DNA from: Hypanus sabinus
Taxonomy: Eukaryota
Assembly (NCBI RefSeq): GCF_030144855.1
Contig: NC_082722.1
Location: forward strand, 2,356,001-2,420,000
Direction of reading: 5' to 3'
DNA length: 64,000 nt
This document shows positions 27,001 through 62,749 of this stretch, in pieces. The notes under the pieces are model-generated. The model saw nothing but the letters and a program-made list of their open reading frames with translations. It made no database searches and was not told the DNA's origin. Each line of letters begins with the position of its first letter. The stretch's first letter is position 1. The position numbers were made by a program, and so were the translations under genes.

Positions 27001-30000
27001 GGACCAGATGGCACAGTCCCAGAGTACAGGACCAGTTGTCAGGTCTCAGAGAACAGGACCAGATGGCACATTCTCAGAATACAGGACCAGTTCGCACCGT
27101 CTCAGAGAACAGGAACAGATGGCACAGTCTCAGAGTACAGGACCAGATTGCACCATCTCAGAATACAGGACCAGATGGCACAGTCTCAGAATACAGGACC
27201 AGATGGCACACTCAGAGTACTGGACCAGATTGCACCGTCTCAGAGTAAAGGACCAGATGGTACAGTCTCAGAGTACAGGACCAGATGGTACAGTCTCAGA
27301 GTACAGGACCAGATGGTACAGTCTCAGAGTACAGGACCAGATGCTACAGTCTCAGAGTACAGGACCAGATCGCACCGTCTCAGAGTACAGGACTAGATCG
27401 CACCGTCTCAGAGTACAGGAGCAGATGGCACTGTCACAGAGTACAGGAGCAGATGGCACTGTCTCAGAGTACAGGACCAGATGACACCGTCTCAGAGTAC
27501 AGGACCAGATGGCACCGTCTCAGAGTACTGGACTAGATGGCACCGTCTCAGAGTACAGGACCAGATGGCACCGTCTCATATTTCAGGACTAGATGGCACA
27601 GTCTCAGAGTACAGGACCAGATCGCACCGTCTCAGAGTACAGGACCAGATGGTACAGTCTCAGAGTACAGGACCAGATGGCACCGTCTCAGATTTCAGGA
27701 CTAGATGGCACAGTCTCAGAATACAGGACCAGATGGCACCATCTCAGAGTCAAGGACCAGATGGCACCACCTCAGATTACAGGAACAGATGGCACAGTCC
27801 CAGAGTACAGGACCAGTTGTCAGGTCTCAGAGAACAGGACCAGATGGCACAGTCTCAGAGTACAGGACCAGATGGCACATTCTCAGAGAACAGAACCAGA
27901 TGGCTCAGTCTCAGAGTCCAGGACCAGTTGGCTCAGTCTCAGAGTACAGGACCAGATGGCACATTCTCAGAATACAGGACCAGTTCGCACCGTCTCAGAG
28001 AACAGGAACAGATGGCACAGTCTCAGAGTACAGGACCAGATTGCACCGTCTCAGAATACAGGACCAGATGGCACAGTCTCAGAATACAGGACCAGATGGC
28101 ACACTCAGAGCACTGGACCAGATTGCACCGTCTCAGAGTACAGGACCAGATGGTACAGTCTCAGAGTACAGGACCAGATGGTACAGTCTCAGAGTACAGG
28201 ACCAGATCGCACCGTCTCAGAGTATAGGACTAGATCGCACCGTCTCAGAGTACAGGACCAGATGGCACTGTCTCAGAGTAAAGGACCAGATGGCACTGTC
28301 TCAGAGTTCAGGACCAGATGACACCGTCGCAGAGTACAGGACCAGATGGCACCGTCCCAGAGTACTGGACTAGATGGCACCGCCTCAGATTACAGGACCA
28401 GATGGCACAGTTCCAGAGTACAGGACCAGTTGGCAGGTCTCAGATAACAGGACCAGATGGCACCGTCTCAGAGTACTGGACCATATGGCACATTCTTAGA
28501 GTACCGGACCAGATGGCAAGTCTCAGAGTCCAGGACCAGATGGCTCAGTCTCAGAGTACAGGACCAGATGGCACCGTCTCAGTCAAGGACCAGATGGCAC
28601 AGTCTCAGAGTACAGGACCTGTTGGCAACGTCTCAGAGTACAGGACCAGATGGCACCGTCTCAGAGTACAGGACCAGATGGCACCGTCTCAGTGTACAGG
28701 ACCAGATGGCACCATCTGAGAGTACAGGACCAGATGGCACAGTCTCTGAGTAGAGGACCAGATGGCACAGTCTCAGAGTACAGGACCAGATGGCACCATC
28801 TGAGAGTACAGGACCAGATGGCACCATCTGAGAGTACAGGACCAGATGGCACAGTCTCTGAGTAGAGGACCAGATGGCACCGTCTCAGAGACAAGGACCA
28901 GATGGCACCGTCTCAGTGTACAGGACCAGATGGCACCATCTGAGAGTACAGGACTAGATGGCACAGTCTCAGAGTACAGGACCAGATGGCACCGCCTCAG
29001 AGTACAGGACCAGATGGCACCGTCTCAGTGTACAGGACCAGATGGTACAGTCTCAGAGTACAGGACCAGATGGCACCGTCTCAGATTTCAGGACTAGATG
29101 GCACAGTCTCAGAGTACAGGACCAGATCGCACCGTCTCAGAGTACAGGACCAGATGGTACAGTCTCAGAGTACAGGACCAGATGGCACCGTCTCAGATTT
29201 CAGGACTAGATGGCACAGTCTCAGTGTACAGGACTAGATGGCACAGTCTCAGATGGCACCATCTCAGAGTACAGGACCAGATGGCACCGCCTCAGTGTAC
29301 AGGACCAAATGGTACAGTCTCAGAGTACAGTACCAGATGGCACAGTCTCAGAATACAGGACCAGATGGCACCGTCTCAGTGTACAGGACCAGATGGCACC
29401 GTCTCAGAGTCAAGGACCAGATGGCACCACCTCAGATTACAGGACCAGATGGCACAGTCTCAGAGTACAGGACCAGATGGCACATTCTCAGAGAACAGGA
29501 CCAGATGGCTCAGTCTCAGAGTCCAGGACCAGTTGGCTCAGTCTCAGAGTACAGGACCAGATGGCACATTCTCAGAATACAGGACCAGTTCGCACCGTCT
29601 CAGAGAAAAGGAACAGATGGCACAGTCTCAGAGTACAGGACCAGATTGCACCGTCTCAGAATACAGGACCAGATGGCACAGTCTCAGAATACAGGACCAG
29701 ATGGCACACTCAGAGTACTGGACCAGATTGCACCGTCTCAGAGTACAGGACCAGATGGTACAGTCTCAGAGTACAGGACCAGATGGTACAGTCTCAGAGT
29801 ACAGGACCAGATCGCACCGTCTCAGAGTATAGGACTAGATCGCACCGTCTCAGAGTACAGGACCAGATGGCACTGTCTCAGAGTAAAGGACCAGATGGCA
29901 CTGTCTCAGAGTTCAGGACCAGATGACACCGTCGCAGAGTACAGGACCAGATGGCACCGTCCCAGAGTACTGGACTAGATGGCACCGCCTCAGATTACAG

Positions 30001-33000
30001 GACCAGATGGCACAGTTCCAGAGTACAGGACCAGTTGGCAGGTCTCAGATAACAGGACCAGATGGCACCGTCTCAGAGTACTGGACCATATGGCACATTC
30101 TTAGAGTACCGGACCAGATGGCAAGTCTCAGAGTCCAGGACCAGATGGCTCAGTCTCAGAGTACAGGACCAGATGGCACCGTCTCAGTCAAGGACCAGAT
30201 GGCACAGTCTCAGAGTACAGGACCTGTTGGCAACGTCTCAGAGTACAGGACCAGATGGCACCGTCTCAGAGTACAGGACCAGATGGCACCGTCTCAGTGT
30301 ACAGGACCAGATGGCACCATCTGAGAGTACAGGACCAGATGGCACAGTCTCTGAGTAGAGGACCAGATGGCACAGTCTCAGAGTACAGGACCAGATGGCA
30401 CCATCTGAGAGTACAGGACCAGATGGCACCATCTGAGAGTACAGGACCAGATGGCACAGTCTCTGAGTAGAGGACCAGATGGCACCGTCTCAGAGACAAG
30501 GACCAGATGGCACCGTCTCAGTGTACAGGACCAGATGGCACCATCTGAGAGTACAGGACTAGATGGCACAGTCTCAGAGTACAGGACCAGATGGCACCGC
30601 CTCAGAGTACAGGACCAGATGGCACCGTCTCAGTGTACAGGACCAGATGGTACAGTCTCAGAGTACAGGACCAGATGGCACCGTCTCAGATTTCAGGACT
30701 AGATGGCACAGTCTCAGAGTACAGGACCAGATCGCACCGTCTCAGAGTACAGGACCAGATGGTACAGTCTCAGAGTACAGGACCAGATGGCACCGTCTCA
30801 GATTTCAGGACTAGATGGCACAGTCTCAGTGTACAGGACTAGATGGCACAGTCTCAGATGGCACCATCTCAGAGTACAGGACCAGATGGCACCGCCTCAG
30901 TGTACAGGACCAAATGGTACAGTCTCAGAGTACAGTACCAGATGGCACAGTCTCAGAATACAGGACCAGATGGCACCGTCTCAGTGTACAGGACCAGATG
31001 GCACCGTCTCAGAGTCAAGGACCAGATGGCACCACCTCAGATTACAGGACCAGATGGCACAGTCCCAGAGTACAGGACCAGTTGGCAGGTCTCAGAGAAC
31101 AGGACCAGATGGCACAGTCTCAGAGTACAGGACCAGATGGCACATTCTCAGAGAACAGGACCAGATGGCTCAGTCTCAGAGTCCAGGACCAGTTGGCTCA
31201 GTCTCAGAGTACAGGACCAGATGGCACATTCTCAGAATACAGGACCAGTTCGCACCGTCTCAGAGAACAGGAACAGATGGCACAGTCTCAGAGTACAGGA
31301 CCAGATTGCACCGTCTCAGAATACAGGACCAGATGGCACAGTCTCAGAATACAGGACCAGATGGCACACTCAGAGTACTGGACCAGATTGCACCGTCTCA
31401 GAATACAGGACCAGATGGCACAGTCTCAGAATACAGGACCAGATGGCACACTCAGAGTACTGGACCAGATTGCACCACCTCAGATTACAGGACCAGATGG
31501 CACAGTCCCAGAGTACAGGACCAGTTGGCAGGTCTCAGAGAACAGGACCAGATGGCACCGTCTCAGAGTAAAGGACCAGATGGTACAGTCTCAGAGTACA
31601 GGACCAGATGGTACAGTCTCAGAGTACAGGACCAGATGCTACAGTCTCAGAGTACAGGACCAGATCGCACCGTCTCAGAGTACAGGACTAGATCGCACCG
31701 TCTCAGAGTACAGGAGCAGATGGCACTGTCTCAGAGTACAGGAGCAGATGGCACTGTCTCAGAGTACAGGACCAGATGACACCGTCTCAGAGTACAGGAC
31801 CAGATGGCACCGTCTCAGAGTACTGGACTAGATGGCACCGTCTCAGAGTACAGGACCAGATGGCACCGTCTCATATTTCAGGACTAGATGGCACAGTCTC
31901 AGAGTACAGGACCAGATCGCACCGTCTCAGAGTACAGGACCAGATGGTACAGTCTCAGAGTACAGGACCAGATGGCACCGTCTCAGATTTCAGGACTAGA
32001 TGGCACAGTCTCAGAATACAGGACCAGATGGCACCATCTCAGAGTCAAGGACCAGATGGCACCACCTCAGATTACAGGACCAGATGGCACAGTCCCAGAG
32101 TACAGGACCAGTTGTCAGGTCTCAGAGAACAGGACCAGATGGCACAGTCTCAGAGTACAGGACCAGATGGCACATTCTCAGAGAACAGGACCAGATGGCT
32201 CAGTCACAGAGTCCAGGACCAGTTGGCTCAGTCTCAGAGTACAGGACCAGATGGCACATTCTCAGAATACAGGACCAGTTCGCACCGTCTCAGAGAACAG
32301 GAACAGATGGCACAGTCTCAGAGTACAGGACCAGATGGCACTGTCTCAGAGTAAAGGACCAGATGGCACTGTCTCAGAGTACTGGACTAGATGGCACCGC
32401 CTCAGATTACAGGACCAGATGGCACAGTTCCAGAGTACAGGACCAGTTGGCAGGTCTCAGATAACAGGACCAGATGGCACCGTCTCAGAGTACTGGACCA
32501 TATGGCACATTCTTAGAGTACCGGACCAGATGGCAAGTCTCAGAGTCCAGGACCAGATGGCTCAGTCTCAGAGTACAGGACCAGATGGCACCGTCTCAGT
32601 CAAGGACCAGATGGCACAGTCTCAGAGTACAGGACCTGTTGGCAACGTCTCAGAGTACAGGACCAGATGGCACCGTCTCAGAGTACAGGACCAGATGGCA
32701 CCGTCTCAGTGTACAGGACCAGATGGCACCATCTGAGAGTACAGGACCAGATGGCACAGTCTCTGAGTAGAGGACCAGATGGCACAGTCTCAGAGTACAG
32801 GACCAGATGGCACCATCTGAGAGTACAGGACCAGATGGCACCATCTGAGAGTACAGGACCAGATGGCACAGTCTCTGAGTAGAGGACCAGATGGCACCGT
32901 CTCAGAGACAAGGACCAGATGGCACCGTCTCAGTGTACAGGACCAGATGGCACCATCTGAGAGTACAGGACTAGATGGCACCGTCCCAGAGTACTGGACT

Positions 33001-36000
33001 AGATGGCACCGCCTCAGATTACAGGACCAGATGGCACAGTTCCAGAGTACAGGACCAGTTGACAGGTCTCAGATAACAGGACCAGATGGCACCGTCTCAG
33101 AGTACTGGACCATATGGCACATTCTTAGAGTACCGGACCAGATGGCAAGTCTCAGAGTCCAGGACCAGATGGCTCAGTCTCAGAGTACAGGACCAGATGG
33201 CACCGTCTCAGTCAAGGACCAGATGGCACAGTCTCAGAGTACAGGACCTGGCAACGTCTCAGAGTACAGGACCAGATGGCACCGTCTCAGAGTACAGGAC
33301 CAGATGACACCGTCTCAGTGTACAGGACCAGATGGCACCATCTGAGAGTACAGGACGAGATGGCACAGTCTCTGAGTAGAGGACCAGATGGCACAGTCTC
33401 AGAGTACAGGACCAGATGGCACCATCTGAGAGTACAGGACCAGATGGCACCATCTGAGAGTACAGGACCAGATGGCACAGTCTCAGAATACAGGACCAGA
33501 TGGCACAGTCTCAGAATACAGGACCAGATGGCACACTCAGAGTACTGGACCAGATTGCACCGTCTCAGAATACAGGACCAGATGGCACAGTCTCAGAATA
33601 CAGGACCAGATGGCACACTCAGAGTACTGGACCAGATTGCACCACCTCAGATTACAGGACCAGATGGCACAGTCCCAGAGTACAGGACCAGTTGGCAGGT
33701 CTCAGAGAACAGGACCAGATGGCACCGTCTCAGCGTAAAGGACCAGATGGTACAGTCTCAGAGTACAGGACCAGATGGTACAGTCTCAGAGTACAGGACC
33801 AGATGGTACAGTCTCAGAGTACAGGACCAGATGCTACAGTCTCAGAGTACAGGACCAGATCGCACCGTCTCAGAGTACAGGACTAGATCGCACCGTCTCA
33901 GAGTACAGGAGCAGATGGCACTGTCTCAGAGTACAGGAGCAGATGGCACTGTCTCAGAGTACAGGACCAGATGACACCGTCTCAGAGTACAGGACCAGAT
34001 GGCACCGTCTCAGAGTACTGGACTAGATGGCACCGTCTCAGAGTACAGGACCAGATGGCACCGTCTCATATTTCTGGACTAGATGGCACAGTCTCAGAGT
34101 ACAGGACCAGATCGCACCGTCTCAGAGTACAGGACCAGATGGTACAGTCTCAGAGTACAGGACCAGATGGCACCGTCTCAGATTTCAGGACTAGATGGCA
34201 CAGTCTCAGAATACAGGACCAGATGGCACCATCTCAGAGTCAAGGACCAGATGGCACCACCTCAGATTACAGGACCAGATGGCACAGTCCCAGAGTACAG
34301 GACCAGTTGTCAGGTCTCAGAGAACAGGACCAGATGGCACAGTCTCAGAGTACAGGACTAGATGGCACATTCTCAGAGAACAGGACCAGATGGCTCAGTC
34401 TCAGAGTCCAGGACCAGTTGGCTCAGTCTCAGAGTACAGGACCAGATGGCACATTCTCAGAATACAGGCCCAGTTCGCACCGTCTCAGAGAACAGGAACA
34501 GATGGCACAGTCTCAGAGTACAGGACCAGATGGCACTGTCTCAGAGTAAAGGACCAGATGGCACTGTCTCAGAGTACTGGACTAGATGGCACCGCCTCAG
34601 ATTACAGGACCAGATGGCACAGTTCCAGAGTACAGGACCAGTTGGCAGGTCTCAGATAACAGGACCAGATGGCACCGTCTCAGAGTACTGGACCATATGG
34701 CACATTCTTAGAGTACCGGACAAGATGGCAAGTCTCAGAGTCCAGGACCAGATGGCTCAGTCTCAGAGTACAGGACCAGATGGCACCGTCTCAGTCAAGG
34801 ACCAGATGGCACAGTCTCAGAGTACAGGACCTGTTGGCAACGTCTCAGAGTACAGGACCAGATGGCACCGTCTCAGAGTACAGGACCAGATGGCACCGTC
34901 TCAGTGTACAGGACCAGATGGCACCATCTGAGAGTACAGGACCAGATGGCACAGTCTCTGAGTAGAGGACCAGATGGCACAGTCTCAGAGTACAGGACCA
35001 GATGGCACCATCTGAGAGTACAGGACCAGATGGCACCATCTGAGAGTACAGGACCAGATGGCACAGTCTCTGAGTAGAGGACCAGATGGCACCGTCTCAG
35101 AGACAAGGACCAGATGGCACCGTCTCAGTGTACAGGACCAGATGGCACCATCTGAGAGTACAGGACTAGATGGCACCGTCCCAGAGTACTGGACTAGATG
35201 GCACCGCCTCAGATTACAGGACCAGATGGCACAGTTCCAGAGTACAGGACCAGTTGACAGGTCTCAGATAACAGGACCAGATGGCACCGTCTCAGAGTAC
35301 TGGACCATATGGCACATTCTTAGAGTACCGGACCAGATGGCAAGTCTCAGAGTCCAGGACCAGATGGCTCAGTCTCAGAGTACAGGACCAGATGGCACCG
35401 TCTCAGTCAAGGACCAGATGGCACAGTCTCAGAGTACAGGACCTGGCAACGTCTCAGAGTACAGGACCAGATGGCACCGTCTCAGAGTACAGGACCAGAT
35501 GGCACCGTCTCAGTGTACAGGACCAGATGGCACCATCTGAGAGTACAGGACGAGATGGCACAGTCTCTGAGTAGAGGACCAGATGGCACAGTCTCAGAGT
35601 ACAGGACCAGATGGCACCATCTGAGAGTACAGGACCAGATGGCACCATCTGAGAGTACAGGACCAGATGGCACAGTCTCTGAGTAGAGGACCAGATGGCA
35701 CCGTCTCAGAGAAAAGGACCAGATGGCACCGTCTCAGTGTACAGGACCAGATGGCACCATCTGAGAGTACAGGACTAGATGGCACAGTCTCAGAGTACAG
35801 GACCAGATGGCACCGCCTCAGAGTACAGGACCAGATGGCACCGTCTCAGTGTACAGGACCAGATGGTACCGTCTCAGAGTACAGGACCAGATCGCACCGT
35901 CTCAGAGTACAGGACCAGATGGTACAGTCTCAGAGTACAGGACCAGATGGCACCGTCTCAGATTTCAGGACTAGATGGCACAGTCTCAGTGTACAGGACT

Positions 36001-39000
36001 AGATGGCACAGTCTCAGATGGCACCATCTCAGAGTACAGGACCAGATGGCACCGCCTCAGTGTACAGGACCAAATGGTACAGTCTCAGAGTACAGTACCA
36101 GATGGCACAGTCTCAGAATACAGGACCAGATGGCACCGTCTCAGTGTACAGGACCAGATGGCACCGTCTCAGAGTCAAGGACCAGATGGCACCACCTCAG
36201 ATTACAGGACCAGATGGCACAGTCCCAGAGTACAGGACCAGTTGGCAGGTCTCAGAGAACAGGACCAGATGGCACAGTCTCAGAGTACAGGACCAGATGG
36301 CACATTCTCAGAGTACAGGACCAGATGGCACATTCTCAGAATACAGGACCAGTTCGCACCGTCTCAGAGAACAGGAACAGATGGCACAGTCTCAGAGTAC
36401 AGGACCAGATTGCACCGTCTCAGAATACAGGACCAGATGGCACAGTCTCAGAATACAGGACCAGATGGCACACTCAGAGTACTGGACCAGATTGCACCGT
36501 CTCAGAATACAGGACCAGATGGCACACTCAGAGTACTGGACCAGATTGCACCACCTCAGATTACAGGACCAGATGGCACAGTCCCAGAGTACAGGACCAG
36601 TTGGCAAGTCTCAGAGAACAGGACCAGATGGCACCGTCTCAGAGTAAAGGACCAGATGGTACAGTCTCAGAGTACAGGACCAGATGGTACAGTCTCAGAG
36701 TACAGGACCAGATGGTACAGTCTCAGAGTACAGGACCAGTTGTCAGGTCTCAGAGTACAGGACCAGATCGCACCGTCTCAGATTACAGGAGCAGATGGCA
36801 CTGTCTCAGAGAACAGGACCAGATGGCTCAGTCTCAGAGTCCAGGACCAGTTGGCTCAGTCTCAGAGTACAGGACCAGATGGCACATTCTCAGAATACAG
36901 GACCAGTTCGCACCGTCTCAGAGAACAGGAACAGATGGCACAGTCTCAGAGTCCAGGACCAGTTGGCTCAGTCTCAGAGTACAGGACCAGATGGCACATT
37001 CTCAGAATACAGGACCAGTTCGCACCGTCTCAGAGAACAGGAACAGATGGCACAGTCTCAGAGTACAGGACCAGATGGCACTGTCTCAGAGTAAAGGACC
37101 AGATGGCACTGTCTCAGAGTTCAGGACCAGATGACACCGTCGCAGAGTACAGGACCAGATGGCACCGTCCCAGAGTACTGGACTAGATGGCACCGCCTCA
37201 GATTACAGGACCAGATGGCACAGTTCCAGAGTACAGGACCAGTTGGCAGGTCTCAGATAACAGGACCAGATGGCACCGTCTCAGAGTCCAGGACCAGATG
37301 GCTCAGTCTCAGAGTACAGGACCAGATGGCACCGTCTCAGTCAAGGACCAGATGGCACAGTCTCAGAGTACAGGACCTGTTGGCAACGTCTCAGAATACA
37401 GGACCAGATGGCACCGTCTCAGAGTACAGGACCAGATGGCACCGTCTCAGTGTACAGGACCAGATGGCACCATCTCAGAGTCAAGGACCAGATGGCACCA
37501 CCTCAGATTACAGGACCAGATGGCACAGTCCCAGAGTACAGGACCAGTTGTCAGGTCTCAGAGAACAGGACCAGATGGCACAGTCTCAGAGTACAGGACC
37601 AGATGGCACATTCTCAGAGAACAGGACCAGATGGCTCAGTCTCAGAGTCCAGGACCAGTTGGCTCAGTCTCAGAGTACAGGACCAGATGGCACATTCTCA
37701 GAATACAGGACCAGTTCGCACCGTCTCAGAGAACAGGAACAGATGGCACAGTCTCAGAGTACAGGACCAGATGGCACTGTCTCAGAGTAAAGGACCAGAT
37801 GGCACTGTCTCAGAGTTCAGGACCAGATGACACCGTCGCAGAGTACAGGACCAGATGGCACCGTCCCAGAGTACTGGACTAGATGGCACCGCCTCAGATT
37901 ACAGGACCAGATGGCACAGTTCCAGAGTACAGGACCAGTTGGCAGGTCTCAGATAACAGGACCAGATGGCACCGTCTCAGAGTACTGGACCATATGGCAC
38001 ATTCTTAGAGTACCGGACCAGATGGCAAGTCTCAGAGTCCAGGACCAGATGGCTCAGTCTCAGAGTACAGGACCAGATGGCACCGTCTCAGTCAAGGACC
38101 AGATGGCACAGTCTCAGAGTACAGGACCTGTTGGCAACGTCTCAGAGTACAGGACCAGATGGCACCGTCTCAGAGTACAGGACCAGATGGCACCGTCTCA
38201 GTGTACAGGACCAGATGGCACCATCTGAGAGTACAGGACCAGATGGCACAGTCTCTGAGTAGAGGACCAGATGGCACAGTCTCAGAGTACAGGACCAGAT
38301 GGCACCATCTGAGAGTACAGGACCAGATGGCACCATCTGAGAGTACAGGACCAGATGGCACAGTCTCTGAGTAGAGGACCAGATGGCACCGTCTCAGAAA
38401 CAAGGACCAGATGGCACCGTCTCAGTGTACAGGACCAGATGGCACCATCTGAGAGTACAGGACTAGATGGCACAGTCTCAGAGTACAGGACCAGATGGCA
38501 CCGCCTCAGAGTACAGGACCAGATGGCACCGTCCAGTGTACAGGACCAGATGGTACAGTCTCAGAGTACAGGACCAGATGGCACCGTCTCAGATTTCAGG
38601 ACTAGATGGCACAGTCTCAGAGTACAGGACCAGATCGCACCGTCTCAGAGTACAGGACCAGATGGTACAGTCTCAGAGTACAGGACCAGATGGCACCGTC
38701 TCAGATTTCAGGACTAGATGGCACAGTCTCAGTGTACAGGACTAAATGGCACAGTCTCAGATGGCACCATCTCAGAGTACAGGACCAGATGGCACCGCCT
38801 CAGTGTACAGGACCAAATGGTACAGTCTCAGAGTACAGTACCAGATGGCACAGTCTCAGAATACAGGACCAGATGGCACCGTCTCAGTGTACAGGACCAG
38901 ATGGCACCGTCTCAGTGTCAAGGACCAGATGGCACCACCTCAGATTACAGGACCAGATGGCACAGTCCCAGAGTACAGGACCAGTTGGCAGGTCTCAGAG

Positions 39001-42000
39001 AACAGGACCAGATGGCACCGTCTCAGAGTACAGGACCAGATGGCACATTCTCAGAGTACAGGACCAGATGGCTCAGTCTCAGAGTCCAGGACCAGTTGGC
39101 TCAGTCTCAGAGTACAGGACCAGATGGCACATTCTCAGAGTACAGGACCAGTTCGCACCGTCTCAGAGAACAGGAACAGATGGCACAGTCTCAGAGTACA
39201 GGACCAGATTGCACCGTCTCAGAATACAGGAACAGATGGCACAGTCTCAGAATACAGGACCAGATGGCACACTCAGAGTACTCGACCAGATTGCACCGTC
39301 TCAGAGTACAGGACCAGATGGTACAGTCTCAGAGTACAGGACCAGATGGTACAGTCTCAGAGTACAGGACCAGATCGCACCGTCTCAGAGTACAGGACTA
39401 GATCGCACCGTCTCAGAGTACAGGAGCAGATGGCACAGTCTCTGAGTAGAGTACCAGATGGCACAGTCTCAGAGTACAGGACCTGTTGGCAACGTCTCAG
39501 AGTACAGGACCAGATGGCACCGTCTCAGAGTACAGGACCAGATGGCACCGTCTCAGTGTACAGGACCAGATGGCACCATCTGAGAGTACAGGACCAGATG
39601 GCACAGTCTCTGAGTAGAGGACCAGATGGCACAGTCTCAGAGTACAGGACCAGATGGCACCATCTGAGAGTACAGGACCAGATGGCACCATCTGAGAGTA
39701 CAGGACCAGATGGCACAGTCTCTGAGTAGAGGACCAGATGGCACCGTCTCAGAGACAAGGACCAGATGGCACCGTCTCAGTGTACAGGACCAGATGGCAC
39801 CGTCTCAGAGTACAGGACCAAATGGTACAGTCTCAGAGTACAGTACCAGATGGCACAGTCTCAGAATACAGGACCAGATGGCACCATCTCAGAGTACTGG
39901 ACCAGATGGCACCGCCTCAGAGTACAGGACCAGATGGCACCGTCTCAGAGTACAGGACCAGATGGCACCGTCTCAGAGTCAAGGACCAGATGGCACCGTC
40001 TCAGATTACAGGACCAGATGGCACAGTCCCAGAGTACAAGACCAGTTGGCAGGTCTCAGAGTAGAGGACCAGTTGGTAACGTCTCAGAGTACAGGACCAG
40101 ATGGCACCGTCTCAGAGTACAGGACCAGATGGCACCATCTCAGAGTCAAGGACCAGATGGCACAGTCTCAGAGTACAGGACCTGTTGGCAACGTCTCAGA
40201 GTACAGGACCAGATGGCACAGTCTCAGAGTACAGAACCAGATGGCACAGTCTCAGAGTACAGGACCAGATGGTACCGTCTCAGAGTACAGGACCAGATGG
40301 TACCGTCTCAGAGTACAGGACCAGATGGCACAGTCTCAGAGTACAGGACCAGATGGCACCGAGTCAGAGTACAGGACCAGATGGTACCGTCTCAGAGTAC
40401 AGGACCAGATGGCACCGTCTCAGAGTACAGGACCAGATGCTACAGTCTCAGAGTGCAGGACCAGATGGCACCGTCTCAGAGTACAGGACCAGATGGTACA
40501 GTCTCAGAGTGCAGGACCAGATGGTACAGTCTCAGAGTACAGGACCAGATCGCACCGTCTCAGAGTACAGGACCAGATCGCACCGTCTCAGTGTACAGGA
40601 CCAGATGGCACCATCTGAGAGTACAGGACCAGATGGCACAGTCTCTGAGTAGAGGACCAGATGGCACAGTCTCAGAGTACAGGACCAGATGGCACCATCT
40701 GAGAGTACAGGACCAGATGGCACCATCTGAGAGTACAGGACCAGATGGCACAGTCTCTGAGTAGAGGACCAGATGGCACCGTCTCAGAGACAAGGACCAG
40801 ATGGCACCGTCTCAGTGTACAGGACCAGATGGCACCATCTGAGAGTACAGGACTAGATGGCACAGTCTCAGAGTACAGGACCAGATGGCACCGCCTCAGA
40901 GTACAGGACCAGATGGCACCGTCCAGTGTACAGGACCAGATGGTACAGTCTCAGAGTACAGGACCAGATGGCACCGTCTCAGATTTCAGGACTAGATGGC
41001 ACAGTCTCAGAGTACAGGACCAGATCGCACCGTCTCAGAGTACAGGACCAGATGGTACAGTCTCAGAGTACAGGACCAGATGGCACCGTCTCAGATTTCA
41101 GGACTAGATGGCACAGTCTCAGTGTACAGGACTAGATGGCACAGTCTCAGATGGCACCATCTCAGAGTACAGGACCAGATGGCACCGCCTCAGTGTACAG
41201 GACCAAATGGTACAGTCTCAGAGTACAGTACCAGATGGCACAGTCTCAGAATACAGGACCAGATGGCACCGTCTCAGTGTACAGGACCAGATGGCACCGT
41301 CTTTGAGTCAAGGACCAGATGGCACCACCTCAGATTACAGGACCAGATGGCACAGTCCCAGAGTACAGGACCAGTTGGCAGGTCTCAGAGAACAGGACCA
41401 GATGGCACCGTCTCAGAGTACAGGACCAGATGGCACATTCTCAGAGTCCAGGACCAGATGGCTCAGTCTCAGAGTCCAGGACCAGTTGGCTCAGTCTCAG
41501 AGTACAGGACCAGATGGCACATTCTCAGAGTACAGGACCAGTTCGCACCGTCTCAGAGAACAGGAACAGATGGCACAGTCTCAGAGTACAGGACCAGATT
41601 GCACCGTCTCAGAATACAGGAACAGATGGCACAGTCTCAGAATACAGGACCAGATGGCACACTCAGAGTACTCGACCAGATTGCACCGTCTCAGAGTACA
41701 GGACCAGATGGTACAGTCTCAGAGTACAGGACCAGATGGTACAGTCTCAGAGTACAGGACCAGATCGCACCGTCTCAGAGTACAGGACTAGATCGCACCG
41801 TCTCAGAGTACAGGAGCAGATGGCACAGTCTCTGAGTAGAGTACCAGATGGCACAGTCTCAGAGTACAGGACCTGTTGGCAACGTCTCAGAGTACAGGAC
41901 CAGATGGCACCGTCTCAGAGTACAGGACCAGATGGCACCGTCTCAGTGTACAGGACCAGATGGCACCATCTGAGAGTACAGGACCAGATGGCACAGTCTC

Positions 42001-45000
42001 TGAGTAGAGGACCAGATGGCACAGTCTCAGAGTACAGGACCAGATGGCACCATCTGAGAGTACAGGACCAGATGGCACCATCTGAGAGTACAGGACCAGA
42101 TGGCACAGTCTCTGAGTAGAGGACCAGATGGCACCGTCTCAGAGACAAGGACCAGATGGCACCGTCTCAGTGTACAGGACCAGATGGCACCGTCTCAGAG
42201 TACAGGACCAAATGGTACAGTCTCAGAGTACAGTACCAGATGGCACAGTCTCAGAATACAGGACCAGATGGCACCATCTCAGAGTACTGGACCAGATGGC
42301 ACCGCCTCAGAGTACAGGACCAGATGGCACCGTCTCAGTGTACAGGACCAGATGGCACCGTCTCAGAGTCAAGGACCAGATGGCACCGTCTCAGATTACA
42401 GGACCAGATGGCACAGTCCCAGAGTACAAGACCAGTTGGCAGGTCTCAGAGTAGAGGACCAGTTGGTAACGTCTCAGAGTACAGGACCAGATGGCACCGT
42501 CTCAGAGTACAGGACCAGATGGCACCATCTCAGAGTCAAGGACCAGATGGCACAGTCTCAGAGTACAGGACCTGTTGGCAACGTCTCAGAGTACAGGACC
42601 AGATGGCACAGTCTCAGAGTACAGAACCAGATGGCACAGTCTCAGAGTACAGGACCAGATGGTACCGTCTCAGAGTACAGGACCAGATGGCACAGTCTCA
42701 GAGTACAGGACCAGATGGCACCGAGTCAGAGTACAGGACCAGATGGTACCGTCTCAGAGTACAGGACCAGATGGCACCGTCTCAGAGTACAGGACCAGAT
42801 GCTACAGTCTCAGAGTGCAGGACCAGATGGCACCGTCTCAGAGTACAGGACCAGATGGTACAGTCTCAGAGTGCAGGACCAGATGGTACAGTCTCAGAGT
42901 ACAGGACCAGATCGCACCGTCTCAGAGTACAGGACCAGATCGCACCGTCTCAGTGTACAGGACCAGATGGCACCATCTGAGAGTACAGGACCAGATGGCA
43001 CAGTCTCTGAGTAGAGGACCAGATGGCACAGTCTCAGAGTACAGGACCAGATGGCACCATCTGAGAGTACAGGACCAGATGGCACCATCTGAGAGTACAG
43101 GACCAGATGGCACAGTCTCTGAGTAGAGGACCAGATGGCACCGTCTCAGAGACAAGGACCAGATGGCACCGTCTCAGTGTACAGGACCAGATGGCACCAT
43201 CTGAGAGTACAGGACTAGATGGCACAGTCTCAGAGTACAGGACCAGATGGCACCGCCTCAGAGTACAGGACCAGATGGCACCGTCCAGTGTACAGGACCA
43301 GATGGTACAGTCTCAGAGTACAGGACCAGATGGCACCGTCTCAGATTTCAGGACTAGATGGCACAGTCTCAGAGTACAGGACCAGATCGCACCGTCTCAG
43401 AGTACAGGACCAGATGGTACAGTCTCAGAGTACAGGACCAGATGGCACCGTCTCAGATTTCAGGACTAGATGGCACAGTCTCAGTGTACAGGACTAGATG
43501 GCACAGTCTCAGATGGCACCATCTCAGAGTACAGGACCAGATGGCACCGCCTCAGTGTACAGGACCAAATGGTACAGTCTCAGAGTACAGTACCAGATGG
43601 CACAGTCTCAGAATACAGGACCAGATGGCACCGTCTCAGTGTACAGGACCAGATGGCACCGTCTCAGAGTCAAGGACCAGATGGCACCACCTCAGATTAC
43701 AGGACCAGATGGCACAGTCCCAGAGTACAGGACCAGTTGGCAGGTCTCAGAGAACAGGACCAGATGGCACCGTCTCAGAGTACAGGACCAGATGGCACAT
43801 TCTCAGAGTCCAGGACCAGATGGCTCAGTCTCAGAGTCCAGGACCAGTTGGCTCAGTCTCAGAGTACAGGACCAGATGGCACATTCTCAGAGTACAGGAC
43901 CAGTTCGCACCGTCTCAGAGAACAGGAACAGATGGCACAGTCTCAGAGTACAGGACCAGATTGCACCGTCTCAGAATACAGGAACAGATGGCACAGTCTC
44001 AGAATACAGGACCAGATGGCACACTCAGAGTACTCGACCAGATTGCAGCGTCTCAGAGTACAGGACCAGATGGTACAGTCTCAGAGTACAGGACCAGATG
44101 GTACAGTCTCAGAGTACAGGACCAGATCGCACCGTCTCAGAGTACAGGACTAGATCGCACCGTCTCAGAGTACAGGAGCAGATGGCACAGTCTCTGAGTA
44201 GAGTACCAGATGGCACAGTCTCAGAGTACAGGACCTGTTGGCAACGTCTCAGAGTACAGGACCAGATGGCACCGTCTCAGAGTACAGGACCAGATGGCAC
44301 CGTCTCAGTGTACAGGACCAGATGGCACCATCTGAGAGTACAGGACCAGATGGCACAGTCTCTGAGTAGAGGACCAGATGGCACAGTCTCAGAGTACAGG
44401 ACCAGATGGCACCATCTGAGAGTACAGGACCAGATGGCACCATCTGAGAGTACAGGACCAGATGGCACAGTCTCTGAGTAGAGGACCAGATGGCACCGTC
44501 TCAGAGACAAGGACCAGATGGCACCGTCTCAGTGTACAGGACCAGATGGCACCGTCTCAGAGTACAGGACCAAATGGTACAGTCTCAGAGTACAGTACCA
44601 GATGGCACAGTCTCAGAATACAGGACCAGATGGCACCATCTCAGAGTACTGGACCAGATGGCACCGCCTCAGAGTACAGGACCAGATGGCACCGTCTCAG
44701 TGTACAGGACCAGATGGCACCGTCTCAGAGTCAAGGACCAGATGGCACCGTCTCAGATTACAGGACCAGATGGCACAGTCCCAGAGTACAAGACCAGTTG
44801 GCAGGTCTCAGAGTAGAGGACCAGTTGGTAACGTCTCAGAGTACAGGACCAGATGGCACCGTCTCAGAGTACAGGACCAGATGGCACCATCTCAGAGTCA
44901 AGGACCAGATGGCACAGTCTCAGAGTACAGGACCTGTTGGCAACGTCTCAGAGTACAGGACCAGATGGCACAGTCTCAGAGTACAGAACCAGATGGCACA

Positions 45001-45826
45001 GTCTCAGAGTACAGGACCAGATGGTACCGTCTCAGAGTACAGGACCAGATGGTACCGTCTCAGAGTACAGGACCAGATGGCACAGTCTCAGAGTACAGGA
45101 CCAGATGGCACCGAGTCAGAGTACAGGTCCAGATGGTACCGTCTCAGAGTACAGGACCAGATGGCACCGTCTCAGAGTACAGGACCAGATGCTACAGTCT
45201 CAGAGTGCAGGACCAGATGGCACCGTCTCAGAGTACAGGACCAGATGGTACAGTCTCAGAGTGCAGGACCAGATGGTACAGTCTCAGAGTACAGGACCAG
45301 ATCGCACCGTCTCAGAGTACAGGACCAGATCGCACCGTCTCAGTGTACAGGACCAGATGGCACCATCTGAGAGTACAGGACCAGATGGCACAGTCTCTGA
45401 GTAGAGGACCAGATGGCACAGTCTCAGAGTACAGGACCAGATGGCACCATCTGAGAGTACAGGACCAGATGGCACCATCTGAGAGTACAGGACCAGATGG
45501 CACAGTCTCTGAGTATAGGACCAGATGGCACAGTCTCAGAGTACAGGACCAAATGGCAAGTCTCAGAGTACAGGACCAGATCGCACCGTCTCAGAGTACA
45601 GGACCAGATGGTACAGTCTCAGAGTACAGGACCAGATGGCACCGTCTCAGAGTACAGGACCAGATGGCACCGTCTCAGAGTACTGGACTAGATGGCACCG
45701 TCTCAGTGTACAGGACCAGATGGCACCATCTCAGAGTACAGGACCAGATGGCACAGTCTCTGAGTATAGGACCAGATGGCACAGTCTCAGAGTACAGGAC
45801 CAAATGGCAAGTCTCAGAGTACAGGA
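1..45826 (+). repeat. Giant 28-bp tandem satellite/minisatellite array (about 1,640 monomers), CR1-derived, with higher-order structure; 5' end lies outside the window
   Basis: Continuous head-to-tail repeats of GGACCAGATGGCAC(C/A)GTCTCAGAGTACA with recurring point and indel variants and no unique spacer. The last monomer ends ...GTCTCAGAGTACAGGA at 45826. Copy number is 45826/28. Confidence 0.99.
38355..45496 (+). repeat. Three-copy higher-order repeat (2390, 2362, 2390 bp) within the satellite
   Basis: Near-identical ORF-track translations recur at 38355/40745/43107/45497, 38606/40996/43358 and 39710/42100/44462. The middle copy lacks exactly one GGTACCGTCTC monomer (two copies at about 40270 and 45022, one at about 42661). 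Confidence 0.93.
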
Positions 45827-45906
45827 ATGTTCCTTTAGAACAGATATGAGGAGGAACTTACTTCGCCAGAATTTTCGGAAACTGGAATTCATTGCCACAG
45901 TCGGCT
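45827..45906 (+). mobile_element. CR1 LINE 3' remnant (ORF2 C-terminus) colinear with the last satellite monomer
   Basis: CCTTTAGAACAGA...GCCAGA...CTGGAATTC...TGCCACA matches the in-window CR1 at 62476-62541 (CCTTTGGAACAGA...GCCAGA...CTGGAATTC...TGCCACA). The translation LRVQECSFRTDMRRN parallels LRIEWRPFGTE (62458) and LRVRGQKFRGNTRGNFF (52018). Confidence 0.85.
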
Positions 45907-45960
45907 TATTTGGTTCGTAACAGTCAGCTCGATCAACTCATGTCCTTCTAGGGGAACTGC

Positions 45961-46512
45961 TGTAGGCCCTGCCAAACAGTGTGCTCCCGTAGTTATAGAC
46001 GCCCCGATACAAGCCCAGGATGTAAAATATCAGACAACACACTAGGTACAATTAAATGATTACACCTTATACTCCTTTTGGTGGTGTTGTTAGTAGAAAC
46101 AAATAAACAATGGTGCCACTCAGTAAATTTATCAGTTTTGTGCACTAACTTAATTCGTTGGAGCTCACTCCTTCTGGGTACATCCCCAAATGACCTCCAA
46201 ACCTTCGACAACCTCTGAACTGTCGAATAGCGGTATCCGCTGCCCTGGGACCGCCAAATGCTCTGGCACTCGCTCTCCGTCGCCACTCACCTCCTCAAAA
46301 GCACTGCAAACCCTTTCTCACTTCCCACCATACAAGATAGCGTAACAGTCATCCATTGGTTAGTTCCCCATTATCTGTAATTATAACTCAAACAATGCAG
46401 CTGCAAAGAACCATTACATCACCAGTTAACATTACAGAGAAGCCATTTCATTATAACACTAAGGAGAAGCCATTTTGTTAGCCTTACAGTTAATATTGCT
46501 TAGAACCCTACA
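45961..46512 (-). mobile_element. Putative solo LTR (552 bp)
   Basis: The termini TGTAGG...CCTACA form a 6-bp inverted repeat with TG/CA ends. The element is non-coding and interrupts an otherwise colinear CR1 3' end. No target-site duplication is visible, and 45907-45960 is unexplained. Confidence 0.45.
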
Positions 46513-46640
46513 GGTATATTTAATGTAGATGTTGATAAGTTTTTGATGATTGAAGGCATCAAATATTACAGGGAGAACGTGATTGGCGAAGAGAGGAAAA
46601 TATATCAGCCATGATGGAAAGGCAGAGCAGACACGATGAG
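46513..46640 (+). mobile_element. CR1 LINE 3' tail, continuation of the satellite host element
   Basis: 46604-46638 matches 62662-62696 at 32/35 nt. The TATATTTAA start matches 62568-62576 of the same CR1 family tail. Confidence 0.85.
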
Positions 46641-46859
46641 TGTACTGATGGTGATGCTGAATTGAACTGAATCTCTTTTGTCTGCATGTGATCTATATTC
46701 CTCCATTTCTTTATTATTCTTGTTTCTCTCTAATAAACTTAGCTGCAATATAACTTCCAGTTGTTTAAAATTAGTTCCCGACCAGTGATGGTAAACTTGA
46801 TTAATACTTACTTTACCGACCTTACCTAATTTAGTGAGCTATGGACTTGGAGCCCAACG

Positions 46860-49230: not shown

Positions 49231-49435
49231 GGACAGCGGGAATCAAATTGAAGAGACTAGAAGAGAGGAGGTTACTTCACAAATAGAGAAAGCTTGTAGA
49301 CAGTGTGTGAGGGAGAATAGGTAGGTGATAGAAAAGGGGAGCACTCAGACCAAAGATGTAGGGGAGGAGGAAGAAAAAGAAGATAGTAAAGTTGTTTGCA
49401 CTGTTAGGGATAAACAGAGAGTAAGAGGTGGAGAA

Positions 49436-55133: not shown

Positions 55134-55249
55134 GTAATGACTTACTAATTGATGAAAATAATAACCATCAGGACAAATATGAAATCCGATAAGGAAATGT
55201 GCAAAAATAATAGGTTCTTGTCAACTTCCCTAATATAAGCTGGAACCTT

Positions 55250-59989: not shown

Positions 59990-62738
59990 GTGGATGAGTC
60001 TGTGGCGTTATTAGAGATTGGTCAGTATAACGTTGTGGACATTACTGAGTCGTGGCTGAAGGAAGGCCATCGTTGGGAGCTTAGCATCTAAAGATATATT
60101 TTGCATCAAAATGACAGGCAGGAAGGCATAGACAGTGATGTGGATCTGTTGGTAAGATATGGAATTATATCTTTAGAAAGGGGTGACATAGGGTCAGTGA
60201 ATATTGGATCTTTGTGGGTGTAGTTACGAAATTGCAAGGGTAAAAATCGTTATGGGAATCATATATAGCCTCAGAATAGTAGTAAAGGTGTGGGGCTGAG
60301 ATTGTAAAGGGAGCTGAAAAAGGCATGAAACAAGGGTAATAGCGCAATTGTAATAGGGGATTTCAATATACAAGGGGATTGGGAAAATCAGGTAGGTCTC
60401 AGATCGCAAGAGCGGGAAATACTTGAATGTTTACCAGATGGATTTTTAGGGCAGCTTCTCTTTGAGTCTATTCCCAGAAAGGCTATCTGAGATTGGGTGT
60501 TATGGAATAACCTAGATCTTGTGAGGGAGCTTAATGTAAACAAACCCTTAGGAGGCAGCGATCGTAATATGTTTGATTTCATACTGCAACTGGAGAGGGA
60601 GAAAGATAACTTTTAAGTATCTGTATCGCAGTGGAATAAAGAAAATTACAGAGGCATGAGAGAGGAGCTTGCCCAGGTGGATTGGAGGCGGATACTGGCG
60701 GGGATGACAGCAGAGCAGAGATGGCTGAAGTTCCTGGGAATAGTTCACACGTCCCAGGATAGATATGTCGCACAAAGGAAAAAGTTCTCAAATATCAGGG
60801 GTAGGCATTCGTAACTGACAAAGGAAATTAAGTACTGCGTAAAAGCCAAGAAAAGGGCATATAATGTAACAAAAGTCAGTGAATGATTGGGATTCTTTTA
60901 AAATCCAACAAATGTCAAGGATAAATGCTATAAGAATAGAAAGAAATGAAATATGAAGGCAGACTAGCCAGTAATATGAAGAAGGATACCAAAGATGTTT
61001 TTCAGTTATATGAAGAGTACAAAGGAGGTGAGAGTTGATATTGGAAGACTGGAGAATCATGCTGGTGAAGTAGTAATGGGGAACAAAGAAATGGCAGATG
61101 AACTTACTGGGTACTTTGTATCTGTCTTCACTGTGAAAACACTAGCAGTATGCCAGGAGGTCTGTGAGTGCCATTGTTATTACAGAGGAACAAGTGCTAG
61201 GCAAACTTAAAGATCTTAAGGTTGCTGGGTCACCTGGGCCAGATAGACTACATCCCAGAGTCCTGAGAGAGGTTGCTACAGAGATAACGGATATATTGGT
61301 CATGCTTTTTCAAGAATTATTTGATTCTGGGATGGTTCCGGAGGACTTAATTGCAGATGTCACTCTACTCTTTAAAAAGAGAGACCAGTTAGCCTAACCT
61401 CGGTGGTTGGGAAAGTATTGGTGTCTGTTGTTAAGGATGAGGTTTCAAGGTACTTGGAGACTGATGACAAAACAAGTCAAAATCAGCATGGTTTCTGTCA
61501 AAGGAAATCTTGCCTGAAAAATCTATTAGAGTTCTTCAAGGAAGTAACAAGCAGGGTGGACAGAGGGGAGGCAGTGGATAAGGTGCCACTCATGAGGCTG
61601 CTTGACAAGATAAAATCTTCTGGTGTTACAGGGAAGATACTGGCGTGGATACTGGAATGGCCGATGGGCAGGAGGCAGCGAGTGGGAATAAAAAGGGGCT
61701 TTTCTGGTTGGCTGTTGGTGACTAGTGGTGTTCCTCAGGGGTCAGTATTGGGACCACTACTTTTCACATTGTTTGTCAATGATTTGCATATTGGAATTGT
61801 TGGCTTTGTGGCAAATTTCCGGATGATATGAAGATATGTGGAGGGATAGGAAGTTCTGAGGAAGAATGCATTTGCAATAGGGCTTAGACAAATTGGAAGA
61901 ATGGACAAAAAAGAGTCAGATGGAATACAGTATTGGAAATGTATGATACTGCATTTTGGTAAAAGGAACAACAGAGCAGACTGTTATCTAAATGGGGAGA
62001 AGTTTCAAACATCAGAAGTGCAGGGGGACTTAGGAGTCCTTGTGCAAGACTCCCAGAAGGTTAATTTACAGGTTGAGTCTTTGGTGAAGAAGGCAAATGC
62101 AATGTTAGCATTGATTCAAGGGGATAGAATATAAAAACAAGGAGATAATACTGTGCCTTTAGAAGACACTAGTCAGGCTGCACTTAGAATACTGTCAATA
62201 GTGTTGGGCCCCATATCTCAGAAAAAGATGTGCTGTCATTGGAGAGAGTCCTGAGGAGGTTAACGAGGATGATACCAGGAATGAAGAGGGTAACACATGA
62301 AAAGAGTTTGGCAGCTTCACTGGAATTTAGAAGAATGTTGGAGGGGGCGGGGGCACGGAATCTCATTGAAACCTATCGAATGTTGAAAGGATGAGATAGG
62401 GTGGATGTGGCGAGGATGTTTCCTGTGGTGGGGGTATCCAGAACTAGAGGGCACAACCTCAGAATTGAGTGGCGACCCTTTGGAACAGAGGTCAGATTTT
62501 TTTTGCCAGAGAGTAGTAAGTTTCTGGAATTCTATGCCACAAACTGTGGTGGAGGCCATGTCCGTGCATATATTTAAGGCAGAAGTTAACCGTTTCTTGA
62601 TCGAGTGGGCCAAAAAAGGGTATGATGATAAGGCATGTGTATGGGTTGAGTGGGATCTGGGATCAGCCATAATGGAATGGCAGAGCAGACTCGATGGCCT
62701 GAATGGCCTAATTCTGCTACTATGTCTTCTGGTCTTAT
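59990..62738 (+). mobile_element. CR1 copy (APE to 3' tail) of the subfamily closest to the satellite host
   Basis: APE ITESWL/IGDFN and RT NQHGFCQRKSCLKNLLEFF / TSGVPQGSVLGPLLF. The C-terminal RMFPVVGVSRTRGHNLRIEWRPFGTE is at 62413-62490, and the tail ends CTATGTCTTCTGGTCTT. Confidence 0.92.
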
Positions 62739-62749
62739 AAAGGGAACAT

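What the first reader, a model, noticed from the sequence alone, without database searches (positions are those of the whole stretch)
45780..46640. A >45-kb satellite apparently expanded in place from 28 bp of a CR1 LINE coding region
Seen: the monomer GGACCAGATGGCACAGTCTCAGAGT matches the single-copy CR1 segment GAACTAGAGGGCACAACCTCAGAAT (62441-62465) at 19/25. Three of the six mismatches are restored by variants present in the array (GGACTAGA, CACAGCCTC, CAGAAT). In one frame the monomer reads RTRWHSLRVQ, versus CR1 RTRGHNLRIE. The last monomer continues without a junction into the next CR1 codons (LRVQ-ECSFRTDMRRN), and the CR1 tail resumes at 46513 (32/35 match to 62662-62696). Inference: the array is a tandem amplification inside its host LINE, probably seeded by slippage between the AGGA words bounding the unit. 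This gives a direct TE-to-satellite snapshot with the parental junction preserved.
Basis: partly seen in the sequence, partly recalled or inferred. Interest (0 to 1): 0.88.

Follow-up and report, generated by a model that had tools for sequence, protein, structure and literature searches.

The report
CR1 LINE-derived 28-bp satellite array
A tandem repeat of more than 45 kb in a stingray genome grew from 28 bases of the coding region of a CR1 jumping gene and still joins that gene seamlessly at one end, which makes it a clean example of a process already known from other animals.

Summary
Window 1-45826 is one uninterrupted array of about 1,636 copies of a 28-bp unit, and it runs off the window start. 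Its last unit continues, ungapped and in frame, into CR1 ORF2 C-terminal codons (45827-45906). A 606-bp non-CR1 insert follows, and then the CR1 3' tail (about 46513-46640).

At the register fixed by the flank, the unit matches the window's other CR1 copy at 21/28 (p about 5e-8). This is also the best hit in 18 kb on both strands. CR1 contigs from related stingrays are closer still: they read MFPIVG-ES-RTRGHSLRV, and the unit differs from the printed part by one fixed G>T.

The same terminal monomers, junction and insert start occur in related species at about single-copy depth. So the boundary looks unique, and it predates those species.

Not shown: the 5' junction, strict birth in place, and the seeding slippage. 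The "restoring variants" argument is weak, and the 32/35 match lies at 46604-46638, not 46513.

TE-derived satellites, including CR1 and LINE ORF2 cases, are already described, so this is a new member of a known kind. The scan flagged other CR1-derived satellites elsewhere in this genome (s1-178156, s1-184479, s1-213609).

The parts
1..45826 (+). 28-bp satellite array of about 1,636 monomers. The commonest type is CAGATGGCACAGTCTCAGAGTACAGGAC. The array runs off the window start.
   Evidence: TRF. Segmentation and variant table. Irregular multi-monomer block duplications of 57, 79, 84-85 and 148 monomers, the best pairs 98.3-98.6% identical.
45796..45826 (+). Terminal 27-nt monomer (variant CCAAATGGCA-AGTCTC, with a 1-nt deletion) plus the shared AGGA (45823-45826) that overlaps the flank.
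   Evidence: Sequence. The 30-mer at 45797-45826 occurs only twice, at 45546 followed by C and at 45797 followed by A. The terminal 142 nt are duplicated 251 nt upstream.
45827..45906 (+). CR1 ORF2 C-terminal codons, colinear and in frame with the last monomer (..SLRVQ-ECSFRTDMRRNLLRQNFRKLEFIATVG).
   Evidence: CR1 contigs of relatives lie on 45810-45859 at 90% identity or more.
45907..46512 (.). 606-bp non-CR1 insert that interrupts the host CR1. It replaces about 20-35 nt of CR1 and holds a 27-bp x2 high-copy repeat at 46427-46480.
   Evidence: CR1 contigs of relatives join 45900 to 46511 or 46527 with only 22 or 34 letters between. Direct repeat. The start of the insert is present in the contigs of relatives.
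46513..46640 (+). Resumed CR1 3' part (..IFNVDVDKFL..SAMMERQSRHDE) of the host copy. It diverges from the family tail after about 46638.
   Evidence: Global alignment with 62436-62740. 32/35 match of 46604-46638 to 62662-62696. Very high word depth and loose ends that read the CR1 consensus tail.
62436..62466 (+). Segment of an independent CR1 copy that is homologous to the monomer (codons S-RTRGHNLRI).
   Evidence: Best hit of the monomer in the non-array 18 kb, 21/28. RVT_1 domain lies upstream at 61403-61831.
62000..62740 (+). 3' part of the reference CR1 copy used for comparison.

Best explanation
The array is a satellite made from 28 bp of the ORF2 C-terminal coding sequence of one CR1-type LINE copy, covering the codons (E-S)-R-T-R-G-H-S-L-R-V.

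The founder unit carried a G>T change (CAGAGGG to CAGATGG). It was first duplicated head to tail, most likely by replication slippage or unequal exchange between short direct repeats that lay 28 bp apart in that copy. The likely repeats are GAGTctAGGA upstream and GAGTacAGGA downstream. This step is inferred.

The array then grew to at least 45.8 kb by repeated unequal exchange of multi-monomer blocks of 1.6-4.1 kb. The block duplications that show this are observed.

The 3' boundary is the original CR1 sequence: the last unit runs straight into the following CR1 codons. The host CR1 later took a 606-bp insertion. The boundary, the terminal monomers and the start of the insertion are shared with related stingray species. 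So the birth predates their split, and this locus is probably where the satellite arose.

No cellular function is implied. It behaves as ordinary satellite DNA.
For: One array, period 28, with no foreign insertions.

The monomer's best match in the rest of the window is the CR1 position predicted by the ungapped register of the flank, 21/28, p about 5e-8.

The locus is colinear with a CR1 copy over the whole 3' part.

The (T/M)RGHx(L/F)(R/K)V motif is present in three other CR1-like copies in the window, so the direction of derivation is CR1 to satellite.

CR1 contigs in relatives read ATGTTTCCTATAGTAGGG, then lie on 45762-45794 at 90% identity or more, then read GAAGGACGTCCCTTTAGAACA. Others read GCAGAGTCTAGGACCAGAGGGCAC and then lie on 45810-45852.

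The commonest monomer type carries the CR1-like CACAGTCTC state, and T at the founder site is fixed in 1,492 of 1,494 monomers.

Unitigs in organism E (depth 13) and organism G (depth 8.6) begin exactly at 45797 and run past 45990. Array-side unitigs at 45752-45809 and 45783-45826 keep the same monomer order.

Block duplicates of 2,362 and 4,140 nt are 98.3-98.6% identical, against 81.5% identity at lag 28.
Against: The 5' end of the array is outside the window. It is therefore unknown whether the array runs into upstream CR1 codons, ends at a 5'-truncation point, or ends in unrelated DNA.

First-stage notes report other CR1-derived satellites on other pieces of this genome (27-bp and 3'-end types). 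These may be the same family, and I could not inspect them.

The relatives' contigs across 45797-46435 are 7-8% diverged, against 2.5-3.5% for 46604-47214. A close paralogue rather than the orthologue is not excluded.

Logan word depth is not a copy number.

The direct repeat proposed as the seed is read from relatives' CR1 copies, not from the progenitor.
Confidence: 0.8

Rival explanations
1. The satellite did arise from CR1, but at another locus. This array is a secondary copy that was moved here together with its CR1 boundary by segmental duplication, or it is one of several arrays of a dispersed family.
For: Other CR1-derived satellites are noted on other pieces of the same genome. Organism J carries the monomers at high word depth. 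The array-proximal flank is more diverged from relatives than the distal flank.
Against: The junction unitigs in two relatives have about single-copy depth (13 and 8.6). The junction, the terminal monomer order and the adjacent non-CR1 insert are all conserved together. The related species A-H hold less than 5% of the array's 31-mers, which argues against a large shared dispersed family.
Confidence: 0.12
2. A CR1 master element already carried a short internal tandem duplication of this 28-mer. A copy retrotransposed here and only then expanded.
For: Expansion of short tandem arrays that are internal to a TE is a described route to satellites (PMC12628747). The founder G>T is fixed, which fits a single variant source.
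Against: The CR1 contigs laid from four related runs show one copy of the segment, flanked by MFPIVG and GRPFRT codons. None shows a dimer. All three other CR1-like copies in the window are single-unit.
Confidence: 0.06
3. Chance resemblance: a pre-existing unrelated satellite that merely abuts a CR1 fragment.
For: Only that 19/25 against a single degenerate copy would be weak evidence if taken alone.
Against: The in-register test gives p about 5e-8, and this is the best hit in the window. The reading frame is continuous across the boundary. Relatives' CR1 copies lie on the monomer sequence at 90% identity or more over 33 nt.
Confidence: 0.01

Closest known systems
Chicken HinfI repeat with an embedded CR1 element (Li & Leung 2006), and chicken centromeric Cen satellites that contain CR1-C fragments (Shang et al. 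2010). Both as listed in PMC9659126 and PMC6947457.
   Same: The satellite DNA sequence comes from a CR1-family LINE, including part of ORF2 and the 3' region.
   Different: By my recollection of the primary papers, which I did not read here, the chicken units are long composite units that embed a CR1 piece. Here the whole unit is 28 bp of ORF2 codons, and the array still abuts its parental CR1 colinearly. The host is a stingray rather than a bird.
L1 ORF2-derived satellites: PROsat of Phodopus roborovskii and Pvc20 of the harbour seal. Also the common cetacean satellite, derived from the L1 3' end (PMC9659126).
   Same: A segment of LINE coding sequence or 3' end is amplified into a satellite.
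   Different: The LINE clade differs (L1 rather than CR1). The review text I read does not report a preserved parental junction for these cases. I did not check their unit sizes here.
Minisatellite birth by slippage or unequal exchange between 5-10 bp direct repeats that flank the future unit (Haber & Louis 1998, as summarised in PMC6947457).
   Same: The unit is short at 28 bp. It is bounded by AGGA at the visible junction, and probably by GAGTNNAGGA repeats 28 bp apart in the parental CR1.
   Different: This array is far longer than a typical minisatellite, at more than 45 kb. The 5' repeat is inferred from relatives' CR1 copies, not seen in the progenitor.
Satellites that arise from tandem repeats inside retrotransposons, or from tandem TE insertions (Vondrak et al. 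2020, PMC7004042; McGurk & Barbash 2018, PMC5932611).
   Same: TE-to-satellite transition, followed by growth through unequal exchange.
   Different: Neither a double insertion nor a pre-existing internal TE tandem repeat is seen here. Ordinary CR1 copies carry the segment once.

Membership tests
Satellite DNA (long tandem array) | Head-to-tail copies of one unit over tens of kilobases | tested here: met
   Array at 1-45826, period 28, about 1,636 units, only 10 short partial-unit gaps.
Satellite DNA (long tandem array) | Signs of unequal-exchange dynamics: variant monomers arranged in duplicated multi-monomer blocks | tested here: met
   Blocks of 57, 79, 84-85 and 148 monomers are repeated, with pairs at 98.3-98.6% identity against 81.5% at lag 28. 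The higher-order structure is irregular rather than uniform.
TE-derived satellite | Monomer homologous to an internal TE segment beyond chance | tested here: met
   21/28 at the single predicted offset, p about 5e-8, and best hit in the window. Relatives' CR1 contigs lie on the monomer at 90% identity or more.
TE-derived satellite | Array boundary colinear with the parental TE on both sides | tested here: inconclusive
   The 3' boundary is colinear and in frame. The 5' boundary lies outside the window.
CR1-clade LINE (identity of the flank) | Reverse transcriptase ORF2 followed by the C-terminal ..RTRGHxLR..FRTxMRRNFFTQRVVxxWNxLP.. region and the shared 3' tail | tested here: met
   The flank aligns with the 62-kb copy through this region and the tail. 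That copy has RVT_1 upstream. The motif is shared by two more copies. That this motif is typical of CR1 is my own knowledge of chicken and vertebrate CR1 ORF2, not a tool result.
CR1-clade LINE (identity of the flank) | ORF1 with an esterase (SGNH/GDSL) domain, as in many CR1-like elements | tested here: inconclusive
   A neighbouring near-full-length element has a weak Lipase_GDSL_2 hit at 48619-48999 (E 5e-4, 21.1 bits, below the cut-off of 32.9). The host copy itself keeps only its 3' end.
Slippage-born minisatellite (Haber-Louis model) | Short direct repeats flanking the unit in the unexpanded progenitor | tested here: inconclusive
   AGGA is shared by the unit start and the flank. Relatives' CR1 copies read GCAGAGTCTAGGACC upstream, against TCAGAGTACAGGA at the unit end. 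The progenitor's own 5' side is not available.
Locus-restricted array (born in place) | The junction is unique in the genome and present at the homologous locus in relatives | tested here: inconclusive
   Junction unitigs have depth 13 (organism E) and 8.6 (organism G), about single-copy. They break at 45797 and continue into the non-CR1 insert. Word depth is only a rough guide, and no genome-wide map was possible.

The most novel reading that the evidence does not exclude
The C-terminal ORF2 segment of this stingray's CR1 family may be a recurrent hotspot for satellite birth. The cause would be its built-in direct repeat spaced 28 bp apart (GAGTNNAGGA). On this reading, the 27-bp and 28-bp CR1-derived arrays noted on different chromosomes arose independently from different CR1 copies, which would make the genome a natural series of TE-to-satellite transitions caught with their junctions intact.
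Probability: 0.2. Interest if true: 0.55.

Novelty: new member of a known kind. Interest (0 to 1): 0.36.

Why it matters
Most satellites have lost any trace of how they began. Here the parental junction is preserved, the unit maps to identifiable codons of a LINE, and the boundary can be followed into related species. The founder mutation, the seeding repeats, the order of events and the turnover rate could therefore all be worked out from assemblies alone. The case adds a cartilaginous-fish CR1 example to the bird and mammal LINE cases. It does not change current understanding.

Tried and rejected
1. Gradient test. Monomers near the junction are no closer to CR1 than distant ones. Mean mismatches in 28 to the 62-kb copy are 8.8-9.2 in every 3-kb bin. 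The 'restoring variants' are therefore not evidence.

2. Uniform higher-order repeat. Plain autocorrelation only decays with lag, because indels destroy the register. Monomer-level analysis shows irregular block duplications and no single higher-order repeat.

3. Self-BLAST of the array. It returned nothing at word size 64 and timed out at word size 40. I replaced it with targeted global alignments. The 'k+1' control in that call is invalid, because a global alignment simply absorbs a 28-nt shift.

4. DNA hairpin propensity of the monomers. Only the palindromic variant folds better than shuffles (z = -2.1). The common types do not (z about 0). No general structural explanation follows.

5. Rfam on 45700-64000: no family matched.

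6. Raw-read run X21 laid nothing, so it is a different organism.

7. Literature search for the monomer sequence found 0 papers. I found no paper on stingray or elasmobranch CR1 satellites.

8. Our-findings search by sequence was blank.

9. Long-range RNA pairing between the monomer-homologous ORF2 segment and the CR1 tail. It ranks first in the 62-kb copy but is absent from two other copies. It is not used in the explanation.

Full report
WHAT IS THERE

Tandem Repeats Finder reports a single array at 1-45826 with period 28, 1,637 copies and 82% matches. My own segmentation finds 1,636 monomers. Of these, 1,494 are exactly 28 nt, and there are 268 sequence variants. There are only ten gaps of 8-14 nt, and nothing foreign is inserted anywhere in the 45.8 kb. 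The array runs off the window start, so its full length and its 5' edge are unknown.

The commonest monomer is CAGATGGCACAGTCTCAGAGTACAGGAC, with 114 copies. The TRF consensus differs from it at one site (CACCGTCTC), which creates a CpG.

THE JUNCTION

The last unit is a 27-nt variant at 45796-45822, followed by AGGA. It continues without a break into GAATGTTCCTTTAGAACAGATATGAGGAGGAAC.... Read in frame, a canonical unit plus the flank gives RTRWHSLRVQ-ECSFRTDMRRNLLRQNFRKLEFIATVG.

An independent LINE copy at 62.4 kb has an RVT_1 domain upstream at 61403-61831. At the equivalent place it reads MFPVVGVS-RTRGHNLRIE-WRPFGTEV.... A global alignment of the terminal unit, 45827-45906 and 46513-46660 against 62436-62740 is colinear through the whole 3' part of the element.

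Between 45906 and 46513 the host copy carries 606 bp that CR1 copies lack. CR1 contigs from related genomes join 45900 to 46511 or 46527 with only 22 or 34 letters between.

CR1 homology itself does resume near 46513.

IS THE MONOMER-CR1 MATCH MORE THAN CHANCE?

I scanned all 28 rotations of the unit against both strands of 45907-64000, about one million comparisons. The top score is 21/28 at 62436-62466. That is exactly the offset dictated by the ungapped alignment of the flank with 62467 onward.

The motif (T/M)RGHx(L/F)(R/K)V, followed a few codons later by F/H-R-x-x-x-R, is present in two further, more divergent CR1-like copies in the window: 51717-52154 on the plus strand and 63155-63586 on the minus strand. 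The sequence is therefore an old, conserved part of the LINE protein, and the direction of derivation is LINE to satellite.

EVIDENCE FROM RELATED GENOMES

Public runs that hold the unique flank share only 14-27% of its 31-mers. Their contigs differ from the window by about 2.5-8%. They are therefore related species rather than the source individual.

Laying their contigs on 45743-45990 gave three results.

(a) Many CR1 copies lie on the monomer sequence at 90% identity or more. Their unmatched ends read CR1 codons on both sides. One group reads TGGAGATGATGTTTCCTATAGTAGGG before 45762 and GAAGGACGTCCCTTTAGAACA after 45794. Another reads ATAGTGGCAGAGTCTAGGACCAGAGGGCAC before 45810, and that contig then lies on 45810-45852 with 4 mismatches. 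The family sequence is thus approximately ..MFPIVG-ES-RTRGHSLRV-(E)GRPFRT.. The printed part, AGGACCAGAGGGCAC, differs from the unit only by G to T. T at that site is fixed in 1,492 of 1,494 monomers, as expected from a single founder.

(b) Contigs of about single-copy depth in organism E (318 nt, depth 13) and organism G (284 nt, depth 8.6) start exactly at 45797. They run through the junction, the CR1 codons and into the non-CR1 insert beyond 45990. Position 45797 is k-1 bases before the first flank-specific base (45827). That is where a 31-mer unitig must break if the preceding 30-mer also occurs with another continuation. In the window that 30-mer occurs twice, at 45546 followed by C and at 45797 followed by A.

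(c) Array-side unitigs in organisms G and F keep the window's order of variant monomers across two unit-unit joints. These are 45752-45809, 45783-45826 (which ends exactly at 45826) and 45755-45809. A small array at least therefore exists there too.

Together these results show that the boundary, the terminal monomers and the start of the 606-bp insert predate the split of these species, and that the boundary is probably unique in those genomes.

Only one other run (organism J) holds as much as 6% of the array's 31-mers, and the relatives A-H hold less than 5%. This fits the rapid turnover of array interiors. Organism J shows monomer unitigs at word depths of 120-314, against about 5-6 for its low-copy contigs. 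That is of the order expected for one or a few arrays of this size. Word depth is not a copy number, so I treat this as weak evidence.

HOW THE ARRAY GREW

Identity at lag 28 is 81.5%. Blocks of 57, 79, 84-85 and 148 monomers recur locally. The best pairs, at offsets of 2,362 and 4,140 nt, are 98.3-98.6% identical. The terminal 142 nt are duplicated 251 nt upstream. This pattern is what repeated unequal exchange of multi-unit blocks produces, and there is no single uniform higher-order repeat. An array with no TE insertion, next to an 18-kb flank that holds at least four CR1-like fragments, also points to continuing turnover.

HOW IT PROBABLY BEGAN (INFERENCE)

The unit starts with AGGAC and the flank starts with AGGAA, so four bases are shared at the boundary. 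In the relatives' CR1 copies the sequence upstream of the unit is GCAGAGTCT-AGGACC. The end of the unit reads TCAGAGTAC-AGGA. In the parental copy, therefore, GAGTNNAGGA (or CAGAGTNNAGGA in one group of contigs) probably lay twice, 28 bp apart. Such a pair is the classical substrate for slippage or unequal exchange that makes a first duplication (the Haber-Louis model, summarised in PMC6947457). I could not see the progenitor's own 5' side, so this step is not shown.

WHAT DID NOT HOLD UP

The variants exist, but they are the ordinary commonest transitions. No monomer has fewer than 6 mismatches in 28 to the 62-kb copy, and there is no gradient towards the junction.

The 62-kb copy is also a poor reference, because it is a degenerate member. 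The family as sampled in relatives is much closer to the unit.

A 5'-truncated host copy would also lack those codons.

COMPARISON WITH WHAT IS KNOWN

Reviews list many TE-derived satellites. They include the chicken HinfI repeat built around a CR1 piece with part of ORF2 and the 3' UTR, and chicken centromeric satellites with CR1-C. They also include L1 ORF2-derived PROsat and Pvc20, and the cetacean satellite from the L1 3' end (PMC9659126 and PMC6947457). Other sources are PMC12628747, PMC7004042 and PMC5932611.

I found no paper that holds this monomer, and none that describes CR1-derived satellites in rays or sharks.

The case is therefore a new member of a known kind. Its particular merits are the very short coding-derived unit, the intact parental junction and the cross-species conservation of that junction.

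First-stage notes of this scan report further CR1-derived satellites on other pieces of the same genome: s1-178156 (27-bp unit, more than 22 kb), s1-184479 and s1-213609. Another note reports a TE-derived 49-kb satellite that has been followed up (s1-195636). I could not inspect these. They raise two possibilities that I cannot separate here: a dispersed family, or recurrent independent births from the same CR1 region.

VERDICT

- Observation: confirmed.
- CR1 origin with a preserved 3' junction: very likely (about 0.9).
- Birth at this locus: probable (about 0.65).
- Slippage between flanking direct repeats: plausible but inferred.
- Interest: moderate to low (0.36).

Noticed in passing
window 62443-62470 and 62706-62740: In the 62-kb CR1 copy, the ORF2 segment homologous to the satellite unit is complementary to that copy's own 3' tail. 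RNAduplex gives -27 kcal/mol, rank 1 of 235 windows, and the pairing appears in both the MFE and the centroid fold. It is absent from the two other CR1-like copies (ranks 203 of 223 and 80 of 232). It is therefore probably chance or specific to one subfamily.
   Followed up: partly
window 46427-46480: A 27-bp direct repeat in two copies (TAACATTACAGAGAAGCCATTTCATTA) lies inside the 606-bp insert. Word depth over this stretch in related genomes is 25,000-44,000, so it belongs to a very high-copy element or satellite of unknown type.
   Followed up: no
window 48619-52300: A near-full-length CR1-like element. It has an ORF1 piece with a weak GDSL/SGNH esterase hit (E 5e-4, below the cut-off), an RVT_1 piece at 50836-51186, and an intact 145-aa C-terminal ORF at 51717-52154.
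   Followed up: partly
window 53641-54006 and 54857-55192: Two ORFs with immunoglobulin V-set/Ig and C1-set Pfam hits (C1-set E 4e-12). This is the Ig-superfamily gene that another note flagged (s1-181490). Only the Pfam check was done here.
   Followed up: partly
window 1-45826, for example 45438-45465: The monomer variant CAGATGG-CA-CCATCTG is a perfect 7-bp dyad and has 62 copies. The founder G>T that separates the unit from CR1 creates the CAGATG half-site. Only this variant folds better than shuffles (z = -2.1).
   Followed up: partly
window 45872-45882: The window differs from the homologous contigs of two related species by five clustered substitutions plus a 2-bp indel within 12 bp. 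The relatives keep the more CR1-like state (..GGTGGGG.AACTGTGG..). This looks like a complex mutation or a small conversion tract in the window's lineage.
   Followed up: no
window 45797-46435 versus 46604-47214: Relatives' contigs are 7-8% diverged next to the array but only 2.5-3.5% diverged a few hundred bases further out. Either sequence evolves faster beside the satellite, or the proximal contigs are close paralogues.
   Followed up: no
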